A stretch of 64,000 nt of DNA from Macrostomum lignano (GCA_002269645.1 NIVC01001111.1:292586-356585); one strand, 5' to 3'; numbered from the stretch's first letter, positions 12,129-63,436 are shown. Translations and numbers: made by a program. The notes: a model not told the origin generated them from the letters alone.

Positions 12129-12138
12129 GGGGGAGAGG
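12129..12138 (+). promoter_or_regulatory. Polypurine tract GGGGGAGAGG
   Basis: Purine run immediately upstream of the 3' LTR. Confidence 0.85.
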
Positions 12139-12334
12139 TGTAGTGTACGCCCCTCTACGCCTGTAGGCTTGTATGTGACTATAGCTTGAGTTCTCTCGAC
12201 CAACGTGCGCTAGCTCTGCCCCACCCCCCTTAACCATTGCATAACGTGGTAGCCGCACGTCGGCAGTGACTATATATTAACTCAAATATATGGTCCACGA
12301 GACCACTTTATATTTCGCGCACAAGCGCACTACA
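12139..12334 (+). repeat. 3' LTR (196 bp)
   Basis: Matches 7881-8076. Confidence 0.97.
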
Positions 12335-12445
12335 ATGAGTGATTCAGTTCATTAGTGATTCAGTTCATGAGTGATTCAGTTCATGAGTGATTCGGTTCAT
12401 GAGTGATTCAGCTCATTAATGATTCAGTTCCTGAGTGATTCAAGT
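12335..12445. repeat. 16-bp minisatellite, right part
   Basis: Same TTCATGAGTGATTCAG unit resumes after the 3' LTR. Confidence 0.95.
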
Positions 12446-16520: not shown

Positions 16521-17744
16521 TTATTGGCTCAGCCGCTCTGCACTCCCAAGCTGCTTGTCTTCATCGCCTCGCACCAGCCGCCTCCTCGTGACGACAACCC
16601 GGCTTCGCCTGGCCTCCGTCAGGATTCGCTGATTCTCCGCCGTCCTGCACGTTGTTGGATGCTGACTTCTGAAATCAACCGAGGCCGCTTCGTCATCAAC
16701 GTCGACATCGTCGTCACCGTCGTCTTCGTCGTTGTTTCCGCCGACTTCGTCGAGAAGGCCACGGTGGCGGCGGCTGTTCACTGAGCGCAGGTGCGGCTGA
16801 CCGGCGGCGCGCCGACCGTCCAGCAGCTGGTAAATGCTGGTGAGAGCGCGGTCCACTTGCTGCTTGCGCACCGCCTTGTAATCATGTGGAATAGGCAAGA
16901 GTTAGTGCTGTTTCACTTGCTTCCCAGCTACTCAAAGTAGTTTTTGGTAGTAAATAGTTACCGGCATATTTTCAGAAGGGCACATAGGTGCAACGTCTTC
17001 GGTGACACTGTTGCACAGCTGAGGCAATTCTCCCCATTTCAATGACTCCTGAGCACATTCAAGCGCCAAGAATTACGCAGACACGCACTCACACACACGC
17101 TCACACAGGGTGTACAGCGGCCCTGACTTTCTAATCTTCATGCATGTACACTCTCTGTGCCTTGGGGATTGGCCCTCATGGGGGCCACACGTTGCAACGG
17201 TCAAGCAACCCAGTGCTCACCTGTTCCTTCTCCCGTCTCCGACTGTCGCTCCTTCGCCGCTCGAAGTCGAACACCGGCTCACTCGGTCCTCTTAGCTGTC
17301 CGTTGCTCATCTGGGTGATGAAAATCGGCGACTGCTGCGGCGTCTCATCGACCGGCGCCAGAGGACTTTTCCTCGATGCTGCCGACGTGGAGGAAGCCGA
17401 CGCCAGGCCGCCAGACGTTGATGGCATATCGTCGAACAGGTCGCGAGCCAGGCGATGCAACGCTGAGTTCAGGCGGGACGGCAAACCCAACGGGTTGGTG
17501 GCCGGGTTTGCGATGTACGGCTTGGTGGTGAGCGAGCGATTCGGCGCTGAGGGCTGCGTGAGTTTTTAGATTTAAGCCAGGAAAAACTGCTGTGTTTACT
17601 GCGAAATGCTCACTGTGGTTTTGTGCAATTGCGGTTGAGGCACGTGCAGGTACGGCTGCTTCACATGCCGGTTAGTACACAAGTTAGTACTCATTAGCTG
17701 TTATTTTTATTTGACTTTTTCACTTTTTGAAAGTTTATTTCAGC

Positions 17745-17784
<40 letters not shown>

Positions 17785-19464
17785 TAATTAATAATAATAA
17801 TTGATTACATCTGCCCCAATTGGGCCAGATGTGCAACCGACAGCTCAGCCGCATTGCACGCAAGGACGACTAAAGTAACGTATACTTAAGTAGTCTTTGA
17901 TTGCACGGCGCATCTGAAGGCTGCGTACGGCTGTTCAGTCCAAGGACTGCAGGGGGTCGCCACACACCCTCAATTACCCCAGCTAATGCTGGTACCCATT
18001 TTACAGCTGGGTGAACTGAAGCAATGCAGAGTTAAGTGTCTTGCTCAAGGATGCAAATTGTTCCAGTGGAATCGGGAATCGAACCCCCGACCTTCAAGTC
18101 GTGAGTCCGACGCTCTAATCACTGGGCTCAAACCCCCCTTAGTTACGGTGATAACTGTTTAGGCATGGTTTTATTAATCTCATCCCATTCACATTGAGTG
18201 GCTACAGTCAGCCGTTGAAAGCAACTCGAGTCAAGCATTAACCGCATCGAAAACACCGCACAGCATTTGTTTCAGTTTTGCTCACCGCTGATCCACTTTG
18301 CAGCGCCCGGCTCTGCAGCTCGGCCACTTGGGCCCAGTCGGCCGTCAACTTTTCTGTGTCGCCTCGGCTCAGGCGGGGACAGGGGCACAGGGTCGGCCGG
18401 AACTGGACCTTAGATCGAACCGCCTCCTCCCAGGGGTTGCGTTTGCGTTTCTTCACGGCTTGAAACACGCTCAGCGTGACGAATTCCGGCGCCTTAGACT
18501 GGCGCGCCTCCAGCGGGCGCATGAACCTGCAAAGCAGCGCCAAATTTACGATTCATTTACAACATAAAGAGTCTATAAGCTTTCAGAAGTTATGCGGAAA
18601 CTTTCCCTGAATGCAATCTTCCCATCTTCTGATTGAATTAACTAATATTATATTATTTTCAATACTGGGGTAGGGAATCAAAGGTTTTTGCTCTATTTCG
18701 ATTTTCCCTATAGCTGATGCTAGTGATGCTTTTCACATTTCGTAGGTCAATTCGAGGTGCTTCCTTGTGATTTTTGATCGTTAAATTCTACTTGTGTTCA
18801 GGGTTGTACAGCGGTCTTTATTTCCAATCGTCAGGCATGTACACTCTCTGTACCTTGGAGGCTGGCCTTCATGGGTTTGGATCTCACGGCATCCCCTCGG
18901 CCAATTTTTGCGCAAAAGCTCCAAACGAATGCGGCCGCGCACGGAATCGAACCAGGGGTCGTGGCGCGCGAGAGTCATTCGTGTTTACCGCACTCTGCCT
19001 CCCTCGGTAACAATATTGCTTTCCCTCACTAACACACTCACACAGTCCCATGGCGTTGTGTTTGGTTGTAGACTGATAGAAATCTATCTGAAGCATCCTA
19101 TCCATACCTACGAGTGAGCACGGCACCAAAGGCCTTACCTGGGCAAGCTCATGTCAATAAAGTCCGGATACTGCTCGGCACTGGGCAGTCTCTCCAGCAG
19201 CAGAGTCGGCTCCCGGATTGCCTGATCGCGCAGCGCCACAAAGCGCTTCTTCTCCTGGTCCCGGTGAGCCGCCACCTGCCCCTGCTGCTTTGCTAACGCC
19301 AACTGTCGCCTCTCCAATCTGGTGCCCTCGCGCACATTCACCTTTAGTAGGCATTCGCCGAACGCCGTGTCCTTCTGATTGTAGGCTAAGTCGATGCCGC
19401 GGTCCAGAATCAGCCGTCTGCGCCTATTGAAGTCCCGTTCTTGCGCTCTACGCCTGGCTGCCAT
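16521..19464 (-). CDS. Uncharacterised protein (~417 aa); exons 19464-19139, 18526-18286, 17553-17221, 16874-16521
   Basis: Four GC-rich open segments join with consistent phases (AG|GTAAGG to GCAG|G; GCG|GTGAGC to GCAG|CCC; CAG|GTGAGC to ACAAG|GCG); no recognised domain. Confidence 0.68.
17075..17192 (-). mobile_element. SINE family A partial copy
   Basis: Reverse complement CATGAGGGCCAATCCCCAAGGCACAGAGAGTGTACATGC...CTGTACACCCTGTGTGAG. Confidence 0.75.
17745..18130 (-). mobile_element. tRNA-derived SINE with Meta/CORE-type central domain and (TTA)n tail
   Basis: Minus strand: GGGGGTTCGATTCCC B-box, CCTTGAGCAAGACACTTAACTCT...CAGTTCACCCAGCTGTAAAATGGGTACC, ending in the (TAA)n run at 17745-17800; homologous to 51239-51548. 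Confidence 0.8.
18795..19005 (-). mobile_element. SINE family A copy
   Basis: Reverse complement has CCTGGTTCGATTCCGTGCG B-box and core GAAGGCCAGCCTCCAAGG..GTGTACATGCCTGACG. Confidence 0.75.
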
Positions 19465-21840: not shown

Positions 21841-22705
21841 TAGGGGTGCTCGGGTTTCCATTTTTTCGGGTTCGGAGTAGAACTCAAACCCGAAGCTATA
21901 ACCCCGAACCCCGAACCCGACCCGAACACCCTACCCGAACCCGAACCCGACCCGGACCCAAAATCCAATCCGACCCGACCTCGAAATTCTACCCGAAAAA
22001 ACATCAATACTCAACCAGAATCAAAATAGCTGCACTATTTTTCGTATTTTTAAGCGCGCTTGAAAAGTAACACTGCAGTATCATGTCGAGACACTGCAAA
22101 AGGGTTATATTATCTGCTTTTCTTCAAGGGCTCCAAGTTCTCTAACGTCCAAGGCTTCATCACACCATAAGTCATAACCTGAATCAAAAACTGTTTCAAA
22201 GGAATAAAGGCGAGAAAAAACAAGTTTTCTATTTTTTTCGACTCCATTCTATTCAACGAAAACTTTTTTCTCCAAAGATGGTATCGTATCGGTTCGTACC
22301 GGCTTTACATTTTATTTAGCACTGCCTCTCTTTGACTCTCTCACTCACTAATAGTGACAGGCTCTACATACCATAATACCAATATGGTCTTCTCTTGCTT
22401 GGAGAAGGCCATAATATTATAAATTCATTTTTTTTCTAAACGGATTCTTGACGAAGCCTTAATTTGTCATTTGTGTAAATTGTTGCGCATTATAAGGTAA
22501 GGTAGCATACTAGAATGATATTTATAACGATTTAAAAAACTAAACATACGCGAAAAAACCTGGAAATACTCAGTTTACGCTTGATTTCGTTTCAACTCGT
22601 AAAAATATAAAAAACCCGAAAACCCTGAACCTGTACCAAAACCCGACCAGAACCCCGAACCCGACCCGAATGCCTACCCCGAACCGCGAACCCCGAACAC
22701 CCCTA
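21841..22705. mobile_element. Non-autonomous DNA transposon (hAT-like MITE)
   Basis: 14-bp TIR TAGGGGTG(C/T)TCGGG at both ends, clustered CCCGAA subterminal repeats at both ends, flanking TCTACGC on both sides (imperfect 7-8 bp TSD). Confidence 0.7.
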
Positions 22706-34042: not shown

Positions 34043-34232
34043 CATGGTGCTCACTCATGGTGCTCACTCATGGTGCTCACTCATGGTGCTCACTCATGGT
34101 GCTCACTCATGGTGCTCACTCATGGTGCTCACTCATGGTGCTCACTCATGGTGCTCACTCATGGTGCTCACTCATGGTGCTCACTCATGGTGCTCACTCA
34201 TGGTGCTCACTCATGGTGCTCACTCATGGTGC
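34043..34232. repeat. 13-bp minisatellite (CATGGTGCTCACT), ~14 units
   Basis: Direct inspection; directly precedes a headless SINE-A body. Confidence 0.95.
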
Positions 34233-34244
34233 TTTGGCCCAAGG

Positions 34245-34430
34245 GCGATTCACAGGCATGAGGGCCAGCCTCCAAGGCGCAGAGAGTGTACATGCCTGAC
34301 GATTAGAAATTCAAAGGGGCGCTGTACACCCTGTGTGAGCGTGTGCATGAGTGCAGTGTCTGCGCACAGTATTGGCGCGCTTGCATGTGCTCAGGAGTCA
34401 GCTGTATAGGCAGAATGTCGCCGGGTGTCC
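34245..34430 (+). mobile_element. SINE family A body without tRNA head
   Basis: CGATTCACAGGCATGAGGGCCAGCCTCCAAGGCGCAGAGAGTGTACATGCCTGACG...CTGTACACCCTGTGTGAG. Confidence 0.8.
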
Positions 34431-36269
34431 GCAGCCTTCTTGCAGTTATTATTAATATTATTTGGCTGCCCTGAGGGTATCTCTTTGATTTATCTACAGT
34501 TTATCTAACACTGGCATTTAACAGTCAGAGGGCATTTGAACACAGAATCTGATGGCTCAATTTGTTCCCTCAGTCTAGAAAGCCCCCCCGCACTGGCGCC
34601 TCTCATATTGGAAAGCTTTGTGCGGAAAATAGAAAGAGAATTTGAATTAGAATCGGGTGCGGAGCGGACGCAGCGAAGGACTCAGCTGAGTAGACTCTCC
34701 AGGCTTAAGAAAAACACCAAAGAAAAGGAACTGACTTGAAGAGGAGAGTAGTACGAGTGGGTTCGACGTGGCTTCCATAAAGTCCTGAATTTGTAAGCCC
34801 CGCGCTCTGCGGCATGGATAGCTAGACCAGTGCTGGAGAATTCCCTGTTTGGAATGGCGGTCCCGCCTTCTCCGCCCCCGTCCCCAATCGGTCATGAATA
34901 ATGAAGGCCGCGGCGGCTGCCTGCGGGACGGAAATTGAAAAAAAACCCTGGGCCACCCGTGTGCCAACGGACTTCACCGGGAACCAAAGCCAGCCACCTC
35001 GGGATGATCTCAACCTGGAGCGCAGGCATCTGCGCGGAGGCCTGCGGCCGAATTGCGTGCGCGCCATGCAGGTCGGGTAGACCCGACCGCTGCTCCCCTC
35101 TTGAAAGTTGAGAGAGAGAGAGAGAGGAAGAGAGAGTGCTAGAGTAAAAAACTGGCCCACACACAAAGGCTTAGAGACTTCGCCATGGAATGAATGGTAG
35201 GGAGGGAGAGGGGCCACTGACCAATAGATGGCGCCCGCGTGCTCATGAGGGTGTGTGTGTGTGATCGACTGCCGGAGAAAAGTGAATCTTCCTTTTAGGC
35301 TCCCAGTAGGGCCTGGCACGCAACTTGAGGCTTCTCATCTGCTGCCTATCCCTCATTATTTTCGTTCTTCTCTCTTTGCCTGTCTCCTTAGGCATGGTGG
35401 GAAGCGGCAGGTTATTGCATCGCAGATTGTTCTCTTCCGACAGAGGACCCAGGCTCGATTCCTAGTTTTCAGGTTAGCTCTCTCTGGTCGGGTTTCATGA
35501 GACACTTGATACTGCGTGGTGAGGTCCTGCTTTGGGCCGAGGTAAAGGCGGGGGGCATTCACAGATTCTCAACACCGGAGAGGCAGAATGGGCATTCCTC
35601 GCTACGCATTTTGCCCTGGAGTTGGCGATGTCTGGCAAAACAGACATGACCCGAGAGCGCCATTGTCACCGCCCTGATGTCCCTGCGGTTGCGGCAGGGC
35701 CTTGCTGAGAGCGGGGGAAGGACAGCGGACTGTTAGACCAACTCTCCTTGTGCTTAGAAGCCACCCACTGGTTGATCCGAGTGGTTGACAACGGCTGAGG
35801 GGGGTGGGGCTATGAGCAAGTCAAGGCTGCTGTGTAAGCGTGTACCTGCGGGGGACAATGCTACAAGTAGGCTATCCATATTATTGCAATAACCGGGCAC
35901 CTGATCGGCTGGCCTGACTGCCGTCCTTCTTGCTCGCATTCTCCGCCTTCCCTACGCCCAGCGAAAATTGCTTATCGTGTCGCATTACCGTTACTTACCG
36001 GCCCTCCCTATGCCTTCTCCTATCCGGGTAAAGAATTTCATTGCATTCAGCGAGGCGGGAGTCTAAGTCCCCCATCCCCAGTCTCCTCATCTTCGGCTGG
36101 AAGCTGGAAAGCGACTCTGCTGATCCGTAGGCGGCGGTCTAAAGTGCACCGCCGCTCTTGGGTAGCCGAGTTAATAATTGACACGCCTCTTCGTGTTAAT
36201 TTTGCCCGACCACAGCAGTTAGTTGCAGTGAATTAAGGAATGCCTTACGGTCTGCATTGCTGACTACCT

Positions 36270-44948: not shown

Positions 44949-47900
44949 ATGATGGCGAACTTGCTGCTGTACACTTTGCTGCATCTGCTGGCGCTGCCGG
45001 TGCCTCCAGTTGCATCTCGCACTTCTATGCTGACTGGCGCATACCGCATCGGTATTGCTGAGGAGCTGCCAGTTAATTCCATTGTGGCCAGTTTAAAGAC
45101 TTACTTCGAGTCTCGCGGCAACTCTACAGCTGGCGGCCGGTTCAGCCTGATTCAACTGGACGGGCAGCAGTCCGCGTTCCGGGTGGACGAGCGCTCCGGC
45201 GATATCCGGACTGTGGAGCGGATCGACCGGGAGAAACTGGCGTGCAATAAGGGGGAGAAAGTGGCTTGCGTGTAAGGCCGCGTGACTGGGCCGTTTGTCT
45301 AGCCAATCTGCCTCTGTGTCTAGCCAATCTGCCTCTGTGTCTAGCCAATCTGCCTCTGTGTCTAGCCAATCTGCCTCTGTGTCTAGCCAATCTGCCTCTG
45401 TGTCTAGCCAATCTGCCTCTGTGTCTAGCCAATCTGCCTCTGTGTCTAGCCAATCTGCCTCTGTGTCTAGCCAATCTGCCTCTGTGTCTAGCCAATCTGC
45501 CTCTGTGTCTAGCCAATCTGCCTCTGTGTCTAGCCAATCTGCCTCTGTGTCTAGCCAATCTGCCTCTGTGTCTAGCCAATCTGCCTCTGTGTCTAGCCAA
45601 TCTGCCTCTGTGTCTAGCCAATCTGCCTCTGTGTCTAGCCAAACTGCCTCTGTGTCTAGCCAATCTGCCTCTGTGTCTAGCCAAACTGCCTCTGTGTCTA
45701 GCCAATCTGCCTCTGTGTCTAGCCAATCTGCCTCTGTGTCTAGCCAAACTGCCTCTGTGTCTAGCCAATCTGCCTCTGTGTCTAGCCAAACTGCCTCTGT
45801 GTCTAGCCAATCTGCCTCTGTGTCTAGCCAATCTGCCTCTGTGTCTAGCCAATCTGCCTCTGTGTCTAGCCAATCTGCCTCTGTGTCTAGCCAATGTTCT
45901 GTGTCTAATCAAGCTGCCTTTCTCTGTCAAGCCAGTCTGCCGCATGACCCGCTGTCTTGCCAATTTTTCAGACAGTCTACCCAATCTACCAACTCTGACT
46001 AGACAGTCTGCGACACAGTCTACCCAACCTGCTATATTGTCTCGCCAATATATCACTGTTTGTCCATTAAGTCTGCTAATTTATTTTGCAAATCGTTCTC
46101 TTCGATCTGCTTCCGTTCATCTTTTAAGTCAGCCTCCCCTCTCCAAAATCCCCAGCTTCCACTTCCTGGCCTACCTAAACAACCGCATCGGTGTCAATAC
46201 GTTCATCGAAATCTTCGACATCAACGACTGCGCCCCAGTCTGGAACGAAAGCGTCGTTCAGCTGCATTTCCGCGACGGCGACCCGGCCGGCGTGGCCGTG
46301 AAAGTCGCAGCAGCCTCGGACGACGACTGCGGCCGGAACGGCAGCCTCATCTACAAGCTGGACAACCGGGGCGCCGCCTTCTCCCTGAGGAATCGAAATG
46401 GACAGCTCGAGCTGGAGACCAACAGGCTCATCGACAGGGAAGAGTGCGAGTCCTACAGCATGACCCTGTACGCTACGGACGGCGGCGAGCCGCCCCTCTC
46501 CGGCTCCGTGCAGCTGCTTGTCCTGGTCGCCGATATCAACGATCACTCGCCGCAGTTCGCCGGCAGCCTGCTCTCGCCGCCGCGCCCGGTGTACGAAGAC
46601 GAACCGGTCGGGTCGGTTGTCCTGCGGCTGAACGCGACGGACCGGGACTCCGGCGCCAACGGCAAGGTGCTGTTCGAGTTCGCCAGCGTGACAGGCGAAG
46701 GTCAAGAGCTGGCGATGCAGCATTTCAGTGTGGAACCGGATGGTGACGTCATCATCAAGGAGAAGCTGGACTACGATACGATGGCGAAGAAGTACTTTAT
46801 CTTCGAGGTGAGTGCTCTGTGCTCTGAAGGGGATCAGAGGAAAGGGATGTAGAGGAAGGCGGATGTAGATGAAGGCGGAAGTAGAGGGAAGGCGGAAGTA
46901 GAGGAAAGGCGGAAGTAGAGGAAAGACGGATGTAGAGGAAGGCGGATGTTTCTGGCATTTGAGTGCGTAGCAACAGTTGAGCATAGATTAGAATCCCGTC
47001 TTCGCCATCCCACTGCGCAGGTAATCGCCCGAGACGACGCTGAAGGCGCTGAGAATCGCTTGAGTTCCACGGCCACAGTCAGCATTGCGGTGAATGACAG
47101 ACGGGACGAGCCGCCGGTAGTGCAGGTGTGCTTCCTGCCTAACAGTTGCGGTCAGTCGCCTTCGGCCTACCGAGTCAAAGAGGCTCAACCGCCGGGCTCT
47201 GCTGTAGCGCTGGTGCTGGTGAGAGATCCCGATGCCGGGGATCGAGTCAGCTGCTCGGTGGAAGCTGAGCCGAGCTCGATGCCATCCAAGCTGCAGTTTC
47301 CCTTCGTTCTGCTGGAGACACCTGGGGGCGGCGGGGTCGGAAGAGATGCGGAGGTAAGCTCAGAATGATCAGTGCTCACTGCTCAGAGTGATCAGTGCTC
47401 ACTGCTCAGAGTGATCAGTGCTCACTGCTCAGAGTGATCAGTGCTCACTGCTCAGAGTGATCAGTGCTCACTGCTCAGAGTGATCAGTGCTCACTGCTCA
47501 GAGTGATCAGTGCTCACTGCTCAGAGTGATCAGTGCTCACTGCTCAGAGTGATCAGTGCTCACTGCTCAGAGTGATCAGTGCTCACTGCTCAGAGTGATC
47601 AGTGCTCACTGCTCAGAGTGATCAGTGCTCACTGCTCAGAGTGATCAGTGCTCACTGCTCAGAGTGCCTGGAGTACCCTCTTCTAACAGACAAATCTCAC
47701 AAGCCACTATGCCTGCAGTGTGATTTCAATCAAAATTTGCGTTACATTTCAAAGAAATACTCTTACGAGTACACAATAGACAAAAGGGGATTTTGATGTT
47801 CACTAGACATTAATCCCTTTTGCTTCTCACGCAAAAAGAGTGTTTTTATCGGCTGGATCGGTCTTAAGCCTGTAAGATTGCCATCTTTCTTTCGTATTTA

Positions 47901-50900: not shown

Positions 50901-52959
50901 TGGCGGAGGCTTCGGCAGCGTTGGAGCCAGCGAGACGGTGATCGCCTGCCTGTCGGCCATGCTGCTGTTGCTGGGCGCCGCAGTGGTGATCATCGTCTGC
51001 GTGCTGGTCAGGCGCAGGCCCGAGCACAAATGCCGGCGGTCATCAGACGTTGTTGAAGATGTCTTGGCGCCTGGAGCGGCTTTGGCAGCGGCATCGCTGT
51101 GTGATGGGGCTTCCTCACTGGATGCCGGGCAGTTTGGTGAGTGTCCAGGGCCTGATGGTGAGTGTCCAGGGCATGATGATGAGTGTCCAGGGCCTGATGG
51201 TAAGTGTCCAGGGCGTGATAGTGAGTGTCCATGTCGACGGATTGTAGCCTAGTGGTTAGATCGTCGGACTCACGACTGAAAGACTGAAAGGTCGGGGGTT
51301 CGATTCTCGACCCACTCGGAACAATTGAGCAAGACACTTAACTCTACATTGCTTCAGTTCACCCATCTGTAAAATGGGTGCCAGCATTAGCTGGGGTAAT
51401 TGAGGGTGTGTGGCGACCCCCCAGTCCTTGGACTGAACAGCCGTACGCAGCCTTCAGATGCGCCGCGCAATAGCTGCGGTTGAGCTGTCGGTTGCACGTC
51501 TGCCCATTAGGACAGGTGTAGTCCATTAGTACCATTAATTATTATTATGGCATGATGGTGAGTGTCCAGGGCATGTAAGGCATGTACACTCTCTGTGCCT
51601 TGGAGGTTGGCCCGCATGGGTTTGGATCTCATGAAAATCCCCAAGTAAATGTGGAATCGAACCAGACGCGTCTACCGCTGAGCTGCTTTGCCCCCCCCCC
51701 CCCCCAGTTCATGGCACGACGGCGCGTGTCCATGGATGATAAGAACTCAGAACATGCTTATGGGAGCAGAAAAATGGTGACGAAAACATTGCAGAGATGA
51801 ACTCGATCAGCACCAAGATGATACCTGCGTTTCCTTACGATCGCGCAGTTACGGAAAGCTACCAGGACTACCCGGACTGGGCGGAGGTGATTTTCCTGCC
51901 TGTTGTTTTCATATTATTACAGCACTCAGACAAATAGTTTGCCCATTTCTTATCCCTGCAGGACGATTTCGATACCTCCAAGTCCAACGGCATGCGCCTA
52001 AAATTACCTGGTACTGCAGTTTATACAGCTCACAGACGAGCCACAACTGACAGAAATGCGGGCAGTAGGTACTACACCACTAGTCCTGCTATTGGTGAGA
52101 CTGGAATTTTAATAACACATTTATATGTGGTGCTTAAATATAATTTCTATCAGACGTCATTCCAACAATAAGTAGTCACAGCTTGACTCCCATGTGAGTG
52201 ATGTACGACTACATGGTTTATGATTCCTGCCTGACAGCTTGAGTCCCCTTAAGCTACTCAATTTACTTGTAAGGTTGTATTGTCGCAAAACAAACATTCT
52301 GCCTGCCAATAGAGTGCTATTTTTAGAGTAACAGTCTGACGAGATCATTGCGTGATTCTCCCTGACTCACTTCCTCTTCTCTAATTTGCACGCTCTATCA
52401 TTGACATAGCTTCTTTCGGCTAGCAAGTTTCAAATTATGTTTTCTTCGTCAGCCTAAGGAAGCAACTACTAGCGCCACTCGTAGTTTGTTGTTGATAGGG
52501 CAGTGAATATCGACTTTAGCAAGTGTTCAATACGCTGTGTACTTTAATACTGTGAAGCTCTTGTAAGTAAGATTGAGTGAGAGAATTTACTACTTGCAAG
52601 TAGTTTAATGTAGGAAGAAGGCATAAAAAACTTTCTCTTTCTCAAAATTTTAACCGCGACGCTCTGCCTGCCCAGCAGGCTCGAATTCCGAGTACCAGTC
52701 GCTGGACGCGCCCAGGCTCCGTTTCCCCTGGCAACCAATGGGCAGTGCCGAGGCCCCGGCCCGGCTGCTGCACCTCGGCGGACTTCGCGCAAATCCCGAA
52801 CTGGCCGACTCTGGCGCCGCTGCAGCCTCCGCAACGCTACCAAGGAATTTCCGTCGCCGAGCTGACCACAACGACCAGGTGGACAAAACTGCCTCTGTTT
52901 ACTTCCGGCTGGCCCGCCGAAGGCCGCTCTGTCCCTTCAATGAGGCCAGCTTTGTATGA
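44949..52959 (+). CDS. Protocadherin with 7 cadherin repeats, TM and cytoplasmic tail; exons 44949-45271, 46156-46807, 47021-47353, 48084/7-48348, 49686-50121, 50340-51136, 51795-51886, 51962-52064, 52676/9-52959
   Basis: Signal peptide; IDRE/LDRE/LDYD motifs and linkers DINDCAP, DINDHSP, DRRDEPP, DVNDSPP, DVNDNTP, DVNDNAP; TM VIACLSAMLLLLGAAVVIIVCVLV; phase-consistent joins (last three exons less certain). Confidence 0.92.
45296..45895. repeat. 21-bp minisatellite (GTGTCTAGCCAATCTGCCTCT), ~28 units, protocadherin intron 1
   Basis: Starts ~24 nt after the donor at 45272. Confidence 0.97.
46845..46946. repeat. 16-bp repeat (GGATGTAGAGGAAGGC), short array in protocadherin intron 2
   Basis: Same unit as 48472-48888. 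Confidence 0.88.
47358..47665. repeat. 23-bp minisatellite (GCTCAGAGTGATCAGTGCTCACT), ~13 units, protocadherin intron 3
   Basis: Starts 4 nt after the donor GT at 47354. Confidence 0.97.
48472..48888. repeat. 16-bp minisatellite (GGATGTAGAGGAAGGC), ~26 units, protocadherin intron 4
   Basis: Direct inspection. Confidence 0.97.
49060..49260 (+). mobile_element. Possible transposase C-terminal fragment (MULE-like) in protocadherin intron 4
   Basis: GC-rich coding-like stretch RNQRFQRVAATY...HPLLTYLHGFTYAY, resembling the L-x-YL-x-G C-terminal motif of invertebrate MULE transposases; no catalytic core visible. Confidence 0.3.
51137..51230 (+). repeat. 21-bp tandem repeat whose unit begins with the splice donor (GTGAGTGTCCAGGGCCTGATG)
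   Basis: Units at 51137, 51158, 51179, 51200, 51221; remnant at ~51550-51577. Confidence 0.93.
51239..51548 (+). mobile_element. Meta/CORE-type tRNA-derived SINE
   Basis: GGATTGTAGCCTAGTGGTTAG A-box, GGTTCGATTCTC B-box, TTGAGCAAGACACTTAACTCT..CTGTAAAATGGG domain, (TTA)n tail; homologous to 17745-18130. Confidence 0.82.
51578..51700 (-). mobile_element. SINE family A partial copy
   Basis: Reverse complement has GCAGCTCAGCGG head, GGTTCGATTCC B-box and core up to GTGTACATGCC. Confidence 0.72.
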
Positions 52960-55735: not shown

Positions 55736-58700
55736 ATGGAAACATTACGTAGAATTTTTGGGCTTCGAAAGGAAACCAGTCCTTCAGATATCAAAAAGAG
55801 TGGCATTGAATGTATTGTTCAATGTCTAGACGAAGGAAAAGCAACTATTAATTTACCTGTAAGTCATTTTCTTTGATACATGGCCCTATTAAAGTTATGT
55901 TGAATTCCATATGTGGTTCTTAGCTTTTTGAGTCAGTAGCCGAGCTGTTTTTTCTACTTTAGATATTTTAGACATTTGAATGATTGTGTCCTAGAAATAT
56001 AATAAATTATTTATTATATTTAATTTCCAACATTAGAATTAAAATTATAATTTGATAAAAAATCAAGGCTAGTTAATATAGTTTTCCTGTGGTATAAGTT
56101 AAATATAGGTAAATTAAGGACATTAGCCTAAATTTTAAAATGAAGAGATATATTTTATTAAAGTAGTAGGAAAAACTATTTTTAGATAATTTATACTTCA
56201 TTTAAAAATAATTATAAAATAAAATTCTTCAAATATACAAGGTATACTTCCATGTGTTCTATAGCAACTAATGAGTTTTAAGTATTATGAATTGTTTTAT
56301 TATTTTATTAGAGTATCTATTATAACTTTCATCTTTTTGACAGAAAACATGCCTTGCCAGTGAGCTCTATGATAGAGTCTACAAAGAGCTAGACTTCCAA
56401 TGTGAACATGACTATTTTGCTTTGCAATTCACGGACTTTCATGGCATCAGGCATTGGCTAGATCCAACTAAAGAGTTACGGCGCCAGATTAATAAGCGAA
56501 TGCGTGAGTTTTGCTTCTTGACTTACCTTATCTATTGCTAATAATATAGCAAATTGTAATTTAAACATTTTATTACCTAAACCAGAATATATACTAGCTA
56601 TATGAATGTGGAAAGGCAAAATAATTCAAAACTAAATAGTTTTGACCTAGTTTTTGATTGCCTATGACCAAAGCTATCCTTGACCCAAATTGTCCATGAC
56701 CCAAACTTTCCATGACCCAAACTATCCATGACCAAAACTATCCATGACCTAAACTATCCATGACTAAAACTATCCATGACCCACCCAAACTTTCCATGAC
56801 CAAAGCTATCCATGATCCAAATTGTCCATGACCCAAACTGTCTTTGACCCAAACTATCCATGACCCACCCAAACAGTCCATGACCGAAACTGTCCATGAC
56901 CCAAACTTTCCATGACACAAACTATCCATGACCAAAACTGTCCATGACCCAAACTATCCATGACCCAAACAGTCCATGACCCAAACTATTCATGACCCAA
57001 ACTGTCCATGACCCAAACTTTCCATGACCCAAACTATCCATGACCAAAACTATCCATGACCCACCCAAACTTTCCATGACCAAAGCTGTCCATGACCCAA
57101 ACTTTCCATGACCAAAGCTGTCCATGATCCAAATTGTCCATGACCCAAACTGTCCATGACCCAAACTATCCATGACCGAAACAGTCCATGACCCAAACTG
57201 TCCATGACCCAAACCAGTCCTATCAAAATGGGGCATCAAAGGGCAATCAAAGTAATATTTGCATAAGTTACCACACTGTTTTAGCTGGTCCTCCGTTCAC
57301 ATTCCGCTTTCTGGTAAAGTTCTATTCTAGCAGCCGGACAACTATTTGAAAGAAGAGCTGACTCGGTGAGATAATGTGTATAAATTGTATAAATAAATAT
57401 CTAGTTACATTTTGTCACTCATGGACATTGTATATTAAAAACCTGCCGACTTTTCCCCAGCTACTTGTTTGTCCTGCAACTGCGTTCGGATATTCGAGAT
57501 GGCCGGCTTGTTTGCCGAGACGAGGCCAAGGCGGCCGAACTAGCGGCTCTGGTTATACAAGGTGAGGCCCTGCTGCCAGGGTATAGTAGCTGGGAGTGCT
57601 TGAGTGGAGGACTGAAGTGTTTTTGGGTTGGTAAAAGTACTCTTTAAGGATTATTATTATTAGCAAAAGTACACTGAATTTTTTATTTAGCAAGAGTTTA
57701 TTTAAGTGCTGCGCGTCAGTAAAATTATACCGAAAGCCTAGATAATTAAATAAAGTACACTGAAGGTCTGAAGGATTAGCAAAAGTACACTGAAAGTCTG
57801 GAGGCTTAGCAAAAGTACACTGAAAGTCTGGAGGATTAGAAAAAGTACACCGAAAGTCTGGAGGCTTAAGCAAAAGTACACTGAAAGTCTGGAGGATTAG
57901 CAAAAGTACACTGAAAGTCTGGAGGTTTATTTAAAGTACATTGAAATTCTGATGGATTAGAAAAGTACACTGAAAGTCTGGAGGCTTAGCAAAAGTACAC
58001 TGAAAGTCAGGAGGTTTATTTAAAGTACATTGAAAGTCTGATGGATTAGAAAAGTACACTGAAAGTCTGGAGGTTTATTTAAAGTACATTGAAAGTCTGA
58101 TGGATTAGAAAAGTACACTGAAAGTCTGGAGGCTTATTTAAAGTACATTGAAAGTCTGATGGATTAGAAAAGTACACTGAAAGTCTGGAGGCTTAGCTAC
58201 GAGTAAAATACAATAAGAGACGCCGGCTACCAAAAGTACTCTAAAGATCTGGGGGTAGCATATAAGTAACACTAAAAGTGTACGGGAGCTAGCAAAAGTA
58301 CGAGTACACCAGAGAATCGGGGGTACATCAGTAACCAAATGTAATCCAATTTAAGTCTAATGTAACCAAATGTAACCAAGCGCTGCTTAACCAATCCCAA
58401 ATGTAAGAAATAACCTTTCCGCTCCCATTCGCAGCGGAAGAGGACGACTACGACCCCCTGAGACACACGCCCGGCTTCGTGTCTCAGTTCAAATTCCTGC
58501 CAGACCGACAACAGACAGAAGCGTTCGAGCTGCGAGTGCTGGACGAGTACAGGAAGCTGGCGTGAGTGGCTCTTTGCCTTATCAGCTGTTTGTACATATC
58601 TGAAATTGGTTCTGTTTATTTACTGTCTTCAAATCTGTTTTTAGTAACAGAAACCTATCGCCGGCCCTGTGCGAGCGGATGTACCTGAGTAAAGTGAAGA

Positions 58701-61700
58701 ACTGGGAGAACTATGGAGTCGATATGCACACTGTTTCGGTTAGTAACTCATTGCTCACTACATTGTTTATTTCGTTTTAATTCGTTTGTTTTATAGTTAC
58801 ATTTTTATCAGTGAGTTATGGGCTATTCCACAATTTAGTCATGAACTGTTCCATAATTGAGTCATGAACTTTTCCATAATTGAGTCATGGACTGTTCCAT
58901 AATTGAGTCATGAACTGTTCCATAATTGAGTCATGAACTTTTCCATAGTTGAGTCATTAACTGCTCCATAATTGAGTCATTAACTGCTCCATAATTGAGT
59001 CATGAACTGTTCCATAATTGAGCCATGAACTGTTCCATAATTGAGTCATTGACTTCCATAATTGAGTCATTGACTGTTCCATAATTGAGTCCTGGGGTGT
59101 TCCATAATTGAGTCATGAACTTTTCCATAATTGAGTCATGGACTGTTCCATAATTGAGTCATGAACTGTTCCATAATTGAGTCATGAACTGTTCCATAAT
59201 TGAGTCATTAACTGTTCCATAATTGAGTCATGAACTTTTCCATAATTGAGTCATTAACTGCTCCATAATTGAGTCATTAACTGCTCCATAATTGAGTCAT
59301 GAACTTTTCCATAATTGAGTCATGAACTGTTCCATAATTGAGTCATTGACTGTTCCATAATTGAGTCCTGGGGTGTTCCATAATTGAGTCCTGGGGTGTT
59401 CCATAATTGAGTCATGAACTTTTCCATAATTGAGTCATGGACTGTTCCATAATTGAGTCATGAACTGTTCCATAATTGAGTCATGAACTGTTCCATAATT
59501 GAGTCATGAACTGTTCCATAATTGAGTCATGAACTTTTCCATAATTGAGTCATTAACTGCTCCATAATTGAGTCATTAACTGCTCCATAATTGAGTCATG
59601 AACTGTTCCATAATTGAGTCATGAACTGTTCCATAATTGAGTCATTGACTGTTCCATAATTGAGTCCTGGGGTGTTCCATAATTGAGTCATGGACTGTTC
59701 CATAATTGAGTCCTAGGGTGTTCCATAATTGAGTGATGAACTGTTCCATAGTTGAGTCATGGATTGTTTTATTAACCAACCTGTGTGTTTTATGAGCGAA
59801 TTTCCAGTGAGCCGACACTTTCCTGGAAAATGCCGGTCTAAAGTGTAACCCTAACCCAACTTTATAGCACGTAAAGCGCAATTGCTGCAAAAATTCAGTA
59901 ACGAGTTAAAAAAACCAGGCCTTTCTCAGAACTGTCTAACCGTCTTATATTTTGCGTACATCTGTCTGTCTGCCAGCTGCTAATCTCTTATCTCTGTTGG
60001 CAAAAGGTGTCTCTTTTTTGTAGAATAAAAAAACTAACACTGATACGTTTGCACACGCGCTCTCCTTGGACGAAAGCAGTGCAGTCAGTTTTATTTCGGT
60101 CGTTTGTCCCCTCACGAATTCTGTTCTTGTTTGTGTCGTAATTTTTCGGCAGTTGTGTAAAAGCAGTTTCAACGGGCTTCTTCTGGCCTCTTCTGAATCT
60201 GTTAATACTGTAAAAGGCATGAAATAAACTCGTAATTCTACGAAGTCTTACTTCGTAAAGGATTGTAGCTTAGAGAGGGGGTTGTAGCCTAGTGAGGGGA
60301 TTGTAGCCTAGTGAGGGGTTGTAGCCTAGTGAGGGGTTGTAGCCTAGTGAGTGGGTTGTAGCCTAGTGAGGGGGTTGTAGCCTAGTGAGGGGTTGTAGCC
60401 TAGTGAGGGGGTTGTAGCCTAGTGAGGGGGTTGTAGCCTAGTGAGGGGTTGTAGCTAGTGAGGGGTTGTAGCCTAGTGAGGGGTTGTAGCCTAGTGAGGG
60501 GTTGTAGCCTAGTGAGGGGTTGTAGCCTAGTGAGGGGTTGTAGCCTAGTGAGAGGGTTGTAGCCTAGTGAGGGGTTGTAGCCTAGTGAGGGGTTGTAGCC
60601 TAGTGAGGGGTTGTAGCCTAGTGAGGGGTTGTAGCCTAGTGAGAGGGTTGTAGCCTAGTGAGGGGTTGTAGCCTAGTGAGAGGGTTGTAGCCTAGTGAGG
60701 GGTTGTAGCCTAGTGAGGGGGTTGTAGCCTAGTGAGAGGGTTGTAGCCTAGTGAGGGGTTGTAGCCTAGTGAGAGGGTTGTAGCCTAGTGAGGGGTTGTA
60801 GCCTAGTGAGGGGTTGTAGCCTAGTGAGGGGTTGTAGCCTAGTGAGGGGTTGTAGCCTAGTGAGGGGTTGTAGCCTAGTGAGGGGTTGTAGCCTAGTGAG
60901 GGGTTGTAGCCTAGTGAGGGGTTGTAGCCTAGTGAGGGGTTGTAGCCTAGTGAGGGGGTTGTAGCCTAGTGAGAGGGTTGTAGCCTAGTGAGGGGTTGTA
61001 GCCTAGTGAGGGGGTTGTAGCCTAGTGAGAGGGTTGTAGCCTAGTGAGGGGGTTGTAGCCTAGTGAGAGGGTTGTAGCCTAGTGAGGGGTTGTAGCCTAG
61101 TGAGAGGGTTGTAGCCTAGTGAGAGGGTTGTAGCCTAGTGAGGGGTTGTAGCCTAGTGAGAGGGTTGTAGCCTAGTGAGGGGTTGTAGCCTAGTGAGGGG
61201 TTGTAGCCTAGTGAGGGGTTGTTGTAGCCTAGTGAGGGGTTGTAGCCTTGTAGCCTAGTGAGGGGTTGTAGCCTAGTGAGGGGTTGTAGCCTAGTGAGAG
61301 GGTTGGGTTGTAGCCTAGTGAGGGGTTGTAGCCTAGTGAGGGGTTGTAGCCTAGTGAGGGGTTGTAGCCTAGTGAGGGGTTGTAGCCTAGTGAGGGGTTG
61401 TAGGGTTGTAGCCTAGTGAGGGGGTTGTAGCCTAGTGAGGGGGTTGTAGCCTAGTGAGAGGTTTGTAGCCTAGTGAGAGGGTTGTAGCCTAGTGAGGGAG
61501 TTGTAGCCTAGTGAGAGGTTGTAGCTAGTGAGGGGTTGTAGCCTAGTGAGGGGGTTGTAGCCTAGTGAGGGGTTGTAGCCTAGTGAGGGTTGTAGCCTAG
61601 TGAGAGGGTTGTAGCCTAGTGAGGGGTGTAGCCTAGTGAGGGGGTTGTAGCCTAGTGAGGGGTTGTAGCCTAGTGAGGGTTGTAGCCTAGTGAGGGGTTG

Positions 61701-63436
61701 TAGCCTAGTGAGGGGTTGTAGCCTAGTGAGAGGGTTGTAGCTTAGTGAGGGGTTGTAGCCTAGTGAGGGGTTGTAGCTAGTGAGGGGTTGTAGCCTAGTG
61801 AGGGTTGTAGCCTAGTGAGAGGGTTGTAGCCTAGTGAGGGGGTTGTAGCCTAGTGAGGGGGTTGTAGCCTAGTGAGAGGTTGTCGGGGGGGGTTGTCGTG
61901 CGATTCACAGGCATGAGGGCCAACCCAAAGGCACAGAGATGTACATGCCTTACGATTAGAAAGTCAGGGCTGCTATACACACTGTGTAAGCATGTGTATC
62001 AGTGCGTGCTTGTGTACAGTATTGGCGCGCTTGTACGTTCTCAGGAGTCAGCGGAACGGGCAGAATTGCTGTCCCAGAATTGGGCCTCCTGAGATTACTG
62101 TTCCGGGTATATTATTCCTTATCTGATCCCATATCGATCCTCATTATCTGATCCCTATCGATCCCCATTATTTGATCCCATATCGATCCTCATTATCTGA
62201 TCCCCTATCGATCCCCATTATTTGATCCCATATCGATCCACATTATCTGATCCCATATCGATTTCTATTTTATTAATTTGTGATCCTTAAATCTAAGTTA
62301 TATGAATTATGGTATCTGTGTATTGAGGCAGCTCTATCATTCAGCCACAAAATGTCCGAATCAACAGGGCAAGGACGGTCGCACTTATCACCTGGCCTCA
62401 CACCTGCCGGCATTTTGGTTTACGATAGGCAAGAAAAAATGGACTATTCTTCTGGTGAGCAGACAATTTGCAATGCTTTTTAATGCACTTTTACGCCAAA
62501 TTAATTAATTTTTAGTCCTTCTTGTTAAACCTTTATTCAATATTTTTATTTGCTCCGCTTCTAGGCCGCGGATTATCAAGATCGATTTCAATCGGAGTAA
62601 ACTGAAAATTGTGGTCACCGAGGACGACAATCAGGTTGGATTTCGCTTTCAGTTTGACATTCCTCAGGATTATGGCTTACTGTTCGAAGAATCTTCTTTG
62701 AAGCATTTATTATTTGCTCTAATCCTCATTTGAGGTATTTAATCCCCTCAAATCCTCATTTGAGGCATTTAATTCATTGTAATCCTCATTTGAAGCATTT
62801 AATCATCTCTCTAATCCTCATTTTTAGGCATTTAATCCCCTCTAATCCTCATTTGAGGCATTAAATCCCCCTAATCCTCATTTGAGGCATTTAATTCATT
62901 GTAATCCTCATTTGAAGCATTTAATCATCTCTCTAATCCTCATTTTTAGGCATTTAATCTCCTCTAATCCTCGATCTAAGCATTTAATTCCTGCCATTCC
63001 TCAGTTAAAGCATTTAATCCCCCCTATCCCTAATATCAGTAAGCGTCTCCCACCCGCAGGGAGCCCAGCAAGATCACGTGTTTGTATTCAACCTGGCCGA
63101 CACGCAGTCCTGCAAGCACCTGTGGCGCTGCGCTGTTGAGCACCATTCGTTCTTTCGCCTAGTTGAGACCCGGGCGCCGCCAACCAAAGCCAAGCAGCTG
63201 CTGCGAATGCGGTCCAGGTTCTACCACAGCTTCCGCACCGAGTCCGGCCTGGTCAGGGAGCGCCAGTTCGGCACCAGCCAGCGCCGGTCGGCCAGATTCG
63301 AACGGCGACCGTCGACGCGGCACAGCACCAGGCCCAGCTTTGCCAGGGCCGACGCTGAGAGGCGATTCGCCAGGGCGCAGGAGCGGCAGGAGGCCAAGTT
63401 GGCCACGCTGGAGCGGGTCAAGGCCGAGGAGGACGG
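55736..63436 (+). CDS. EPB41L5: FERM + FERM-adjacent protein, EPB41L5/Yurt-like, 3' end outside window, with three 1-nt frameshifts; exons 55736-55858, 56344-56503, 57285-57365, 57461-57561, 58435-58561, 58651-58738, 62368-62454, 62565-62634, 63060-63436
   Basis: HDYFALQF..HWLDPTK, GPPFTFRFLVKFYS, YLFVLQL, YGVDMH, PRIIKIDF..VVTEDD, SCKHLWRCAVEHHSFFRL and FA-domain SRF..FERRPS match the EPB41L5/EPB41L4B/Yurt subfamily. Confidence 0.9.
56665..57215. repeat. ~16-17 bp minisatellite (CCATGACCCAAACTGT) in FERM intron 2
   Basis: Direct inspection. Confidence 0.95.
57750..58195. repeat. ~30-bp minisatellite (AAAAGTACACTGAAAGTCTGGAGGATTAGC) in FERM intron 4
   Basis: Direct inspection. Confidence 0.94.
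58845..59755. repeat. 23-bp minisatellite (CCATAATTGAGTCATGAACTGTT), ~40 units, FERM intron 6
   Basis: Direct inspection. Confidence 0.97.
60258..61880. repeat. 18-19 bp minisatellite (GGGGTTGTAGCCTAGTGA), roughly 85 units, FERM intron 6
   Basis: Direct inspection; unit matches the SINE head at 51239-51254. Confidence 0.97.
61885..62090 (+). mobile_element. SINE family A body without tRNA head
   Basis: GGGTTGTCGTGCGATTCACAGGCATGAGGGCCAACCC..GTACATGCC..GTCAGGGCTGCTATACAC; colinear with 265-365 and 34245-34430. Confidence 0.82.
62112..62262. repeat. ~22-bp repeat (GATCCCATATCGATCCTCATTATCT-like)
   Basis: Direct inspection. Confidence 0.88.
62718..63000. repeat. ~30-bp repeat (AATCCTCATTTGAGGCATTTAATC..) in FERM intron 8
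   Basis: Direct inspection. Confidence 0.88.

What the first reader, a model, noticed from the sequence alone, without database searches (positions are those of the whole stretch)
60258..62090. ~1.6-kb minisatellite made of a SINE Pol III A-box, fused to the body of a different SINE
Seen: the unit GGGGTTGTAGCCTAGTGA contains GGATTGTAGCCTAGTG (60298-60313), identical to the 5' head of the Meta-type SINE at 51239-51254, which is the tRNA A-box region (consensus TRGCNNAGYGG). The array ends and runs straight into a headless family-A SINE body, joined around a shared GGTTGT. Inference: a SINE 5' end seeded a tandem expansion, for example by repeated template jumping/slippage during reverse transcription or later replication slippage, giving ~85 A-boxes and no B-box inside an intron. 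This would be a concrete route from retroposon promoter to satellite, and possibly a TFIIIC/Pol III decoy or insulator-like element.
Basis: partly seen in the sequence, partly recalled or inferred. Interest (0 to 1): 0.72.

Follow-up and report, generated by a model that had tools for sequence, protein, structure and literature searches.

The report
Intronic minisatellite seeded by SINE head
An 88-copy, 18-base tandem repeat in an intron was most likely seeded by the first 18 bases of a tRNA-like mobile element (SINE) and then grew by ordinary DNA slippage; it is a neat but single example of a known process, and nothing suggests it has a function.

Summary
At 60260-61885 there are 88 head-to-tail units of 18-19 nt (GGGGTTGTAGCCTAGTGA). 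They run straight into a headless family-A SINE body (about 61886-62118). One unit variant (60298-60313) is 16/16 identical to the 5' end of the SINE at 51239. The consensus 13-mer occurs nowhere else in the window.

Match, position, side and orientation together make chance very unlikely, so the unit derives from a tRNA-like SINE head (tRNA positions 1-18).

- No unit has a full A-box; 83 units match 10 of 11 positions.
- The "Meta-type" label is untested.
- "A different SINE" is unproven, because the body's own subfamily head is unknown.

The array lies in an intron of a FERM-domain gene, in a window that is 24% minisatellite. A second headless body of the same subfamily (34234) abuts an unrelated 13-nt array.

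Shared unit variants in interspersed blocks show growth by DNA slippage or unequal exchange. Reverse-transcriptase jumping as the seeding step stays possible but untested.

A Pol III or TFIIIC role is not supported: there is no B-box and the A-box is imperfect. No copies outside the window could be reached.

Verdict: a short-unit variant of the known SINE-derived tandem repeats, of modest interest.

The parts
60260..61877 (+). Minisatellite of 88 units of 18-19 nt, consensus GGGGTTGTAGCCTAGTGA. This corresponds to tRNA-like positions 1-18: the acceptor-stem 5' strand plus an A-box lacking its last G.
   Evidence: TRF; unit census and unit order; A-box count. The only two GGATTG units, which are the SINE-like state, are units 1 and 3 at the 5' edge.
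61878..61892 (+). Junction: GGTTGTCG followed by a run of G (GGGGGGG). It is a local duplicate of the body's first bases (GGTTGTCG .. G-run .. TTGTCG). GGTTGT is shared by array unit and body.
   Evidence: Sequence; alignment with the full-length copy at 148-400, which reads GGGTTAGGGTTGTCGTACGATTCAC.
61893..62118 (+). Headless family-A SINE body (conserved core CATGAGGGCCAAC..GGCACAGAGA..GTACATGCCT) with a short AT-rich end. It has the same orientation as the array and the host gene.
   Evidence: blastn to nine other copies, 72-83% identity; multiple alignments. No B-box and no target-site duplication found.
62119..62262 (+). Second, unrelated array (25 nt x 5.8) directly after the SINE's AT-rich end.
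   Evidence: TRF; sequence.
51239..51548 (+). Reference SINE whose first 16 nt equal an array unit. It has a full A-box (TAGCCTAGTGG), a near B-box (GGTTCGATTCT) and an (ATT)n tail, and it is inserted in a 21-nt array.
   Evidence: Sequence; blastn to a second copy; A-box scan. Neither ARAGORN nor the Rfam tRNA model recognises it.
17746..18138 (-). Second copy of the same SINE family, with head GGGGGGTTTGAGCCCAGTGATTAGAG. It shares the G run and the AGTGA with the array unit.
   Evidence: blastn 87%; sequence.
34043..34463 (+). Parallel case: a perfect 13-nt array (CATGGTGCTCACT x 14.7, 34043-34233) abutting a second headless family-A body of the same subfamily (34234-34463). GGTGCT is shared at the junction. 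This unit is not SINE-like.
   Evidence: TRF; sequence; 83% to the body after the 18-nt array; best outside match of the unit is only 11 nt.
56341..56500 (+). Exon encoding a FERM N-terminal domain. With the exon at 63078 it places the array in an intron.
   Evidence: Pfam FERM_N, E = 1.5e-08.
63078..63170 (+). Exon encoding the end of the FERM C-terminal domain.
   Evidence: Pfam FERM_C, E = 1.8e-07.

Best explanation
This is a neutral intronic minisatellite. Its founding unit was the 5'-terminal 18 nt of a tRNA-derived SINE head, lying directly in front of a SINE body that begins with GGGTTGT.

That arrangement put two copies of GG(G)TTGT 18 nt apart. Slipped-strand mispairing between them made the first duplication. 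Replication slippage and unequal exchange then expanded and partly homogenised the array to 88 units. This genome expands short duplications very readily.

The array is not a working Pol III element.

Shown: the array, the head identity, the junction, the variant pattern, the absence of a B-box and the intron position.

Inferred: the order of events, and how 18 nt of head came to lie next to the body. That step could have been an internal deletion in a SINE with such a head, or one template switch of the LINE reverse transcriptase onto the 5' end of a SINE RNA or a fragment of it.
For: - Match to the SINE head: the 13-mer occurs only at the 5' terminus of the SINE at 51242. blastn-short gives E = 0.029 for the consensus unit and 5.7e-4 for the GGATTG variant, and these are the best hits in the masked window.
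- Phase: the array starts with SINE base 1 (GGATTG). The only two GGATTG units are units 1 and 3, at the least homogenised edge.
- Position: the array lies on the 5' side of, and in the same orientation as, a headless SINE body with 0 nt between them. By my arithmetic, chance adjacency of that kind for one given array is about 0.001.
- Microhomology: GGTTGT is shared at the junction, and the body start is itself locally duplicated. The parallel 13-nt array shares GGTGCT with its body.
- DNA-level turnover: the GAGAGGG variant (one substitution from GAGGGGG) is present in 15 scattered units, with AB and CB alternations. The centre of the array is homogeneous and the edges are heterogeneous.
- General propensity: 24% of the window is tandem arrays with unrelated units.
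- Precedent: SINE-derived tandem repeats whose terminal unit continues into the SINE are described in squamates (PMC10702118).
Against: - Only one locus and one reference SINE copy carry this exact head. The second copy of that family differs (16/19 by eye).
- A 13-nt best match somewhere else in the window is not rare in itself (3 of 30 arrays).
- No target-site duplication bounds array plus body, so a single insertion cannot be demonstrated.
- About 100 nt of head between tRNA position 18 and the body start are missing, and their loss is unexplained.
- The array has no hairpin potential that would favour slippage (z = +0.6).
Confidence: 0.55

Rival explanations
1. Own-head version. The locus was one ordinary SINE of the body's own subfamily, whose native head happened to begin GGGGTTGTAGCCTAGTG. 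Its first 18 nt expanded and the rest of the head was lost. No second SINE family is involved.
For: - SINE families swap and share modules (PMC4824008).
- The body subfamily (61893, 34234, 17180) shows no head in any of its three copies, so its native head is unknown.
- Its (ATT)-rich tail resembles that of the 51239 family.
- Family-A heads are already 14/20 like the unit (by eye).
Against: - It requires an extra deletion of about 100 nt of head.
- All seven family-A copies with heads have GCTCAGCGG or GCCCAGCGG A-boxes, not GCCTAGTG.
- The second headless copy has an array that is unrelated to any head.
Confidence: 0.2
2. Array made at insertion by reverse transcriptase. The LINE enzyme copied a headless SINE RNA to its 5' end. 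It then jumped many times onto the 5' end of a SINE RNA, or onto an 18-nt 5' fragment of one, adding a few untemplated G each time. The array would then be concatenated cDNA.
For: - The unit equals tRNA positions 1-18 exactly and the array starts in phase with SINE base 1.
- Unit length varies mainly in the G run (46 units with 4 G, 13 with 5, 3 with 3).
- SINE copies in the window start with G runs of 2 to 15.
- Two of the three headless bodies have an array exactly at the 5' end.
- Template jumping by non-LTR reverse transcriptases, and tandem cDNA made by an RT on a short template, are established in other systems (for example PMC12039810 and papers on the R2 retrotransposon, listed).
Against: - Shared variant units in interspersed blocks need DNA-level duplication anyway.
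- The G run is also the natural tRNA acceptor stem and is prone to slippage.
- 88 consecutive jumps have no precedent in genomic insertions that I know of.
- The 13-nt array at 34043 is 100% identical and hairpin-forming, which fits recent slippage better.
- No target-site duplication was found.
Confidence: 0.07
3. Chance. The unit merely resembles an A-box, and the array lies next to a SINE body because arrays and SINEs are both dense here.
For: - Arrays cover 24% of the window.
- At least one SINE end within 5 bp of some array edge is expected in 28% of random shifts.
- 13-nt best matches elsewhere occur for 3 of 30 arrays.
Against: - The match falls on the first 16 nt of a SINE. By my arithmetic, the chance that any array matches any head this well is about 0.002.
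- In addition, the same array abuts the 5' end of a headless body in the same orientation (about 0.001).
- The edge units carry the SINE-specific GGATTG.
Confidence: 0.03
4. Functional element. The A-box array recruits TFIIIC or Pol III and acts as a decoy, an insulator or a source of small RNA.
For: - 83 near-A-boxes lie in 1.6 kb on the sense strand of a gene.
- tRNA genes and TFIIIC sites can insulate (established knowledge).
Against: - There is no B-box. TFIIIC binding and the known extra-TFIIIC sites depend on the B-box, and A-box contact is weak and B-box-dependent (established knowledge).
- 0 of 88 units have the full A-box.
- No TTTT terminator occurs before 62268.
- The array is one of about 40 unrelated arrays here.
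- G-quadruplex propensity is low (G4Hunter-type score 0.82, loops of 14 nt).
Confidence: 0.03

Closest known systems
SINE-derived satellites (sSat) of squamate reptiles (Vassetzky, Kosushkin & Ryskov 2023, PMC10702118)
   Same: Tandem arrays whose unit is a portion of a tRNA-derived SINE. A terminal unit continues into SINE sequence up to the SINE terminus. Locus-specific subvariants alternate, and long arrays are more homogeneous.
   Different: - sSat units are 67-215 nt and contiguous with the flanking SINE part. Here the unit is only 18 nt, the extreme 5' end.
- About 100 nt of head are missing before the body.
- The body may belong to another family.
- Only one locus is known, and no subtelomeric context is known.
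tRNA-related tandem repeats of amphibians (newt PolIII/TAN, Xenopus satellite 1/OAX, Rana/polIII), as summarised in PMC10702118
   Same: Tandem repeats that carry tRNA-like promoter sequence.
   Different: Those units are 200-740 nt and contain a whole tRNA-like region, with a B-box in most cases. Some are transcribed by Pol III in vitro. Here there is only a truncated, imperfect A-box.
Minisatellite birth by slipped-strand mispairing at non-contiguous short direct repeats, and repeats spawned at retroposon ends such as Alu tails (my own knowledge, not checked here)
   Same: A short direct repeat (GGTTGT) brackets the founding unit. The array lies at the end of a retroposon. Variant repeats are interspersed.
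   Different: The known retroposon-associated cases are mostly at 3' tails. Here the array is at the 5' end and the unit is promoter sequence.
Composite or promoter-array retroposons: SVA (5' CCCTCT hexamer array, SINE-derived parts, VNTR) and the mouse L1 5' monomer arrays (my own knowledge)
   Same: Architecture: a short tandem array at the 5' end, a SINE-derived body and a repeat at the 3' end. In L1 the repeated unit is promoter sequence.
   Different: Those arrays are inherited from master copies and are the same in all copies. Here two copies of one subfamily carry unrelated arrays, which argues for local birth. There is no evidence that this composite is mobile.
Chimeric SINEs and retrocopies made by template switching (for example BivaMD-SINE1, PMC4824008; passerine SINEs, PMC5729268)
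   Same: A join of parts from two RNAs at a short homology is a recognised way to get a head next to a foreign body.
   Different: Known chimeras join whole modules. An 18-nt 5' piece has not been described, to my knowledge.

Membership tests
Minisatellite | Head-to-tail copies of a 10-100-bp unit, tens of copies, with interspersed variant units | tested here: met
   88 units of 18-19 nt, 91% matches, three main variants interspersed
SINE-derived satellite (sSat) | Repeat unit homologous to a portion of a SINE present in the same genome | tested here: met
   16/16 (variant unit) and 13/13 plus the flanking GG (consensus) to the 5' end of the SINE at 51239. This is the best hit in the window, E = 5.7e-4 and 0.029. 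It rests on one SINE copy.
SINE-derived satellite (sSat) | A terminal unit continues colinearly into the same SINE up to its terminus | tested here: not met
   The array runs into a SINE body, but about 100 nt of head are skipped and the body belongs to family A, whose seven copies with heads have other A-boxes
SINE-derived satellite (sSat) | Many loci per genome with the same unit | not testable with these tools
   No other sequence of this organism was reachable. There is one locus in the 64-kb window.
tRNA-derived SINE (the element after the array) | 5' head with Pol III A and B boxes | tested here: not met
   No B-box in 60000-62400. The body starts about 110 nt into the family consensus.
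tRNA-derived SINE (the element after the array) | Family-specific core shared with dispersed copies that have their own flanks and target-site duplications | tested here: met
   Nine other copies at 72-83% identity. Two full copies have 14-15-nt target-site duplications and A-rich tails. No target-site duplication was found for this copy.
MetaSINE superfamily (label given to the SINE at 51239) | 66-bp Meta-domain after the tRNA-derived head | not tested
   The domain sequence is not in the held text of PMC4824008. From memory, the core (..CTTCAGTTCACCCATCTGTAAAATGGG..) looks like the CORE/MIR domain instead; this is a lead only.
Pol III type-2 promoter / TFIIIC site (tRNA gene, extra-TFIIIC site, insulator) | B-box GGTTCGANNCC | tested here: not met
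   None, even with a loose pattern, in 60000-62400
Pol III type-2 promoter / TFIIIC site (tRNA gene, extra-TFIIIC site, insulator) | A-box TRGCNNAGYGG | tested here: not met
   0 of 88 units match fully; 83 match 10 of 11
G-quadruplex-forming minisatellite | Four or more G runs with short loops and a high G4 propensity score | tested here: not met
   GGGG runs are separated by 14-nt loops; G4Hunter-type mean score 0.82, below the usual 1.2-1.5

The most novel reading that the evidence does not exclude
Minisatellites in this genome can be born during retroposition. When the LINE reverse transcriptase reaches the 5' end of a headless SINE RNA, it jumps one or more times onto the 5' end of a tRNA-like SINE RNA, or onto an 18-nt 5' fragment of one. 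The 5' junction then receives concatenated promoter pieces, which later grow. This would link small tRNA-like RNAs, template jumping and minisatellite genesis. It would also explain why two of the three headless bodies here carry an array exactly at their 5' end.
Probability: 0.07. Interest if true: 0.7.

Novelty: new variant of a known kind. Interest (0 to 1): 0.28.

Why it matters
If the reading is right, the locus is a clean, datable example of how a retroposon end becomes a tandem repeat. The founding piece can be named (tRNA-like positions 1-18). The microhomology that allowed the first slip is visible (GGTTGT). The least homogenised edge units still carry the SINE-specific base.

It extends the recently described SINE-derived satellites from units of 67-215 nt in reptiles to an 18-nt promoter fragment in an invertebrate-like genome. 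It also points to an unusually array-prone genome in which such births could be counted.

It does not appear to matter for Pol III biology or for the host gene.

Tried and rejected
**Searches outside the window that found nothing**
- Exact-pattern scans for the array dimer, the SINE core and the SINE head in metagenome, prokaryote-genome and viral collections all returned 0 hits.
- A protein search with the open frame of the SINE core (six copies aligned) returned 0 hits at E <= 10.
- A look-up of a 312-aa window ORF to obtain more of the genome found nothing on record.

**Identifying the organism**
- An STK38 kinase exon gave only 72-76% identity to cuttlefish, paddlefish and scallop proteins, so no close relative was found.

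**Checks on the SINE head**
- The Rfam tRNA model and ARAGORN do not recognise it. "tRNA-derived" therefore rests on the A and B boxes alone.

**Models tested and not supported**
- Target-site duplication around array plus body: none, with a local score below the shuffle mean.
- Nested insertion (family-A copy inserted into a pre-existing copy of the 51239 family): rejected, because no remainder of that SINE lies up- or downstream.
- Hairpin-driven slippage for the 18-nt array: no structure, z = +0.6.

**Weak results**
- General enrichment of SINE ends at array edges is only weak (P about 0.03-0.04 at 12-20 bp).
- Literature searches for the sequence strings found nothing relevant.
Full report
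**1. What is there**

Tandem Repeats Finder reports one array at 60263-61883 with period 18, 89 copies and 91% matches. Read directly, the array starts at 60260 with GGATTGTAGC, 2 nt after a perfect 8-bp hairpin (TACGAAGT-ctt-ACTTCGTA, 60239-60257).

Splitting at GTAGC gives 88 units:
- 41 units of 18 nt (GTAGCCTAGTGAGGGGTT);
- 15 units of 19 nt with GAGAGGG;
- 13 units of 19 nt with GAGGGGG;
- 14 rarer types covering the other 18 units.

The variants are interspersed as AB and CB alternations. Units 12-50 are nearly pure, while the first five units and the last third are heterogeneous.

The array ends as ..GTAGCCTAGTGAGA | GGTTGTCG | GGGGGGG | TTGTCGTGCGATTCACAGGCATGAGGGCC...

**2. The neighbours**

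The sequence from about 61886 to 62118 matches nine other places in the window at 72-83% identity. These places share a core, CATGAGGGCCAAC..AAGGCACAGAGAGTGTACATGCCT..GCTGTACACCCTGTGTGAGCGTGTG.

Seven of the nine copies have a 5' head with an A-box and a B-box behind a G run. Two full copies have A-rich tails and target-site duplications of 14 and 15 nt. Family A is therefore a genuine tRNA-type SINE.

The copy after the array lacks the head. It begins about 110 nt into the consensus, at GGGTTGTCGTGCG, which the full copy at 148-400 reads as GGGTTAGGGTTGTCGTACG.

The SINE at 51239-51548 belongs to a different family:
- it has a second copy at 18138-17746 on the minus strand (87%);
- it has a full A-box (TAGCCTAGTGG, 11/11), a near B-box and an (ATT)n tail;
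- neither ARAGORN nor the Rfam tRNA model recognises it.

From memory, its core resembles the CORE/MIR domain. That is a lead, not a result.

**3. Is the head identity more than chance?**

- 60298-60313 equals 51239-51254, 16/16.
- The consensus 13-mer TTGTAGCCTAGTG occurs outside the array only at 51242. With up to one mismatch, 0.08 matches are expected.
- With the array masked, the SINE head is the best hit of the unit in the window: E = 0.029 for the consensus and 5.7e-4 for the GGATTG variant.

Taken alone this is modest. Three of 30 arrays have a 13-nt best match somewhere else in the window. Three further facts change the picture:
- The match falls on the first 16 nt of a SINE. By my arithmetic, any array matching any of about 8 heads that well has a chance of about 0.002.
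- The same array abuts the 5' end of a headless SINE body with no spacer and in the same orientation (about 0.001).
- The only two units with the SINE-specific GGATTG are units 1 and 3, at the edge where homogenisation is weakest.

With four G, the unit equals tRNA positions 1-18: the acceptor-stem strand GGGGTTG, then T8 and the A-box up to the D-loop. The second copy of the family (GGGGGGTTTGAGCCCAGTGATTAG) shares the G run and the AGTGA. I conclude that the unit descends from a tRNA-like SINE 5' end.

**4. Corrections**

- No unit has the complete A-box TRGCNNAGYGG. 83 units have 10 of 11 positions, with the last G replaced by A.
- There is no B-box in 60000-62400, even by a loose pattern.
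- There is no T4 run before 62268.
- The locus is intronic. A FERM_N exon lies at 56341-56500 (E = 1.5e-8) and a FERM_C exon at 63078 (E = 1.8e-7), both on the + strand, the same strand as array and SINE.

**5. Context**

- About 24% of the window is tandem array, in roughly 40 arrays with nearly all units unrelated. This genome plainly expands short duplications with ease.
- Proximity of SINE ends to array edges is only weakly enriched overall (P about 0.03-0.04). One SINE end within 5 bp of some array edge is expected in 28% of random shifts.
- One parallel case is striking. The closest relative of the body (34234-34463, 83% identity) is also headless, starts within about 10 nt of the same consensus position, and is preceded by a perfect 13-nt array (CATGGTGCTCACT x 14.7). 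That array's last partial unit shares GGTGCT with the body start. The 13-nt unit is not SINE-like, with a best outside match of 11 nt.
- The third member of the subfamily (17180-17024, minus strand) is headless too.

**6. Most likely history**

Shown:
- a head-derived unit;
- a body that begins with the same GGTTGT as the unit;
- a local duplicate of the body start at the junction;
- variant units that can only have spread by duplication. GAGAGGG is one substitution from GAGGGGG and is present in 15 scattered units.

Inferred:
- The founding sequence was head(1-18) directly followed by GGGTTGTCG...
- Its two GG(G)TTGT copies 18 nt apart mispaired and made the first duplicate.
- Slippage and unequal exchange did the rest.

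How 18 nt of head came to lie next to the body is open. Three routes were considered:
- An internal deletion in a SINE that had such a head (the own-head version).
- A single template switch of the LINE reverse transcriptase from the 5' end of the body RNA onto a SINE 5' end or a 5' fragment. Template switching is the accepted origin of chimeric SINEs (PMC4824008; PMC5729268).
- A nested insertion. This is rejected, because no remainder of the 51239-type SINE lies on either side.

No target-site duplication bounds the composite.

**7. Reverse-transcriptase concatenation**

The idea that the whole array was made at insertion cannot be excluded.
- For it: the phase of the array, the G-run length variation (46 units with 4 G, 13 with 5, 3 with 3), and the variable G runs at the SINE 5' ends (2 to 15).
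- Against it: the G run is also the natural acceptor stem and prone to slippage, and the block structure needs DNA-level turnover anyway.
- The 18-nt array has no hairpin potential (z = +0.6). The 13-nt array has strong potential (z = -4 to -6).

**8. Function**

A TFIIIC/Pol III decoy or insulator is not supported. TFIIIC is anchored by the B-box, and the known extra-TFIIIC sites are B-box sites (established knowledge). This array has no B-box and only imperfect A-boxes. G-quadruplex propensity is low (score 0.82, 14-nt loops). The array is one of many unrelated arrays in the same introns.

**9. Comparison with known cases**

The closest described class is the SINE-derived satellites of squamates (PMC10702118). 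Those are arrays of a SINE portion whose terminal unit runs on into the SINE, with alternating subvariants.

This locus differs in several ways:
- its unit is 18 nt, against 67-215 nt;
- it uses only the extreme 5' end;
- it skips about 100 nt before the body;
- it may join two families;
- it is known from one locus only.

It is therefore a short-unit variant of a known kind, not a new kind.

**10. Limits**

No other sequence of this organism could be reached. The organism itself is unidentified; the best match of an STK38 kinase exon is 72-76%, to cuttlefish, paddlefish and scallop proteins.

Noticed in passing
34043-34463: A perfect 13-nt array (CATGGTGCTCACT x 14.7, 100% identity, strong hairpin potential) directly abuts a second headless family-A SINE body of the same subfamily. 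The junction shares GGTGCT. An 8-nt repeat TGGCTGCC lies 21 nt upstream of the array and again right after the SINE tail (a possible target-site duplication).
   Followed up: partly
51135-51231 and 51549-51575: A 21-nt array whose unit contains a strong 5' splice site (ATG|GTGAGT) begins exactly at the end of the last cadherin exon. 21 nt is 7 codons and the frame stays open through the array, so alternative donors would add ECPGPDG-like heptads. A SINE (51239-51548) is inserted in this array, and a 3'-truncated family-A copy (51576-51690, minus strand) abuts it.
   Followed up: partly
47355-47666: A 23-nt array (99% identical copies) starts 4 nt after an exon/intron border (GCGGAG|GTAAGC). 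This is another array sitting at an intron start.
   Followed up: no
whole window: About 24% of the 64 kb is tandem arrays, roughly 40 arrays with periods of 11-44 nt and mostly unrelated units. Many lie in introns of the cadherin, NDR-kinase and FERM genes. This is an unusually array-prone genome.
   Followed up: partly
148, 2920(-), 3949, 15444(-), 18138(-), 51239, 51690(-), 61886: SINE copies begin with G runs of very different length (2, 3, 6, 6, 6, 8, 13, 15), including copies of one head type. This could be homopolymer slippage or untemplated addition at the 5' end during retroposition.
   Followed up: no
2098-2920 (minus strand): A family-A SINE with a head whose 3' end runs into a 46-copy 11-nt array (AAACTATCACC)n, as if the tail had become a minisatellite.
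   Followed up: no
7741-12442: A gypsy-like retroelement with an intact 1329-aa gag-pol reading frame (8032-12021). It is flanked on both sides by the same 16-nt tandem array (7741-7882 and 12335-12442), presumably inside its long terminal repeats.
   Followed up: no
60239-60257: A perfect 8-bp inverted repeat with a 3-nt loop (TACGAAGT ctt ACTTCGTA) ends 2 nt before the first array unit.
   Followed up: no
17024-17245 (minus strand): The third headless family-A body starts immediately after what looks like an exon end with a splice donor (..GGAACAG|GTGAGCACTGGGTTGC..). The donor may lie at or in the SINE's 5' edge.
   Followed up: no
21903-21996 and 22640-22698: Short arrays of (CCCGAA)n-like hexamers and 18-mers, reminiscent of a telomere-type repeat but interstitial.
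   Followed up: no
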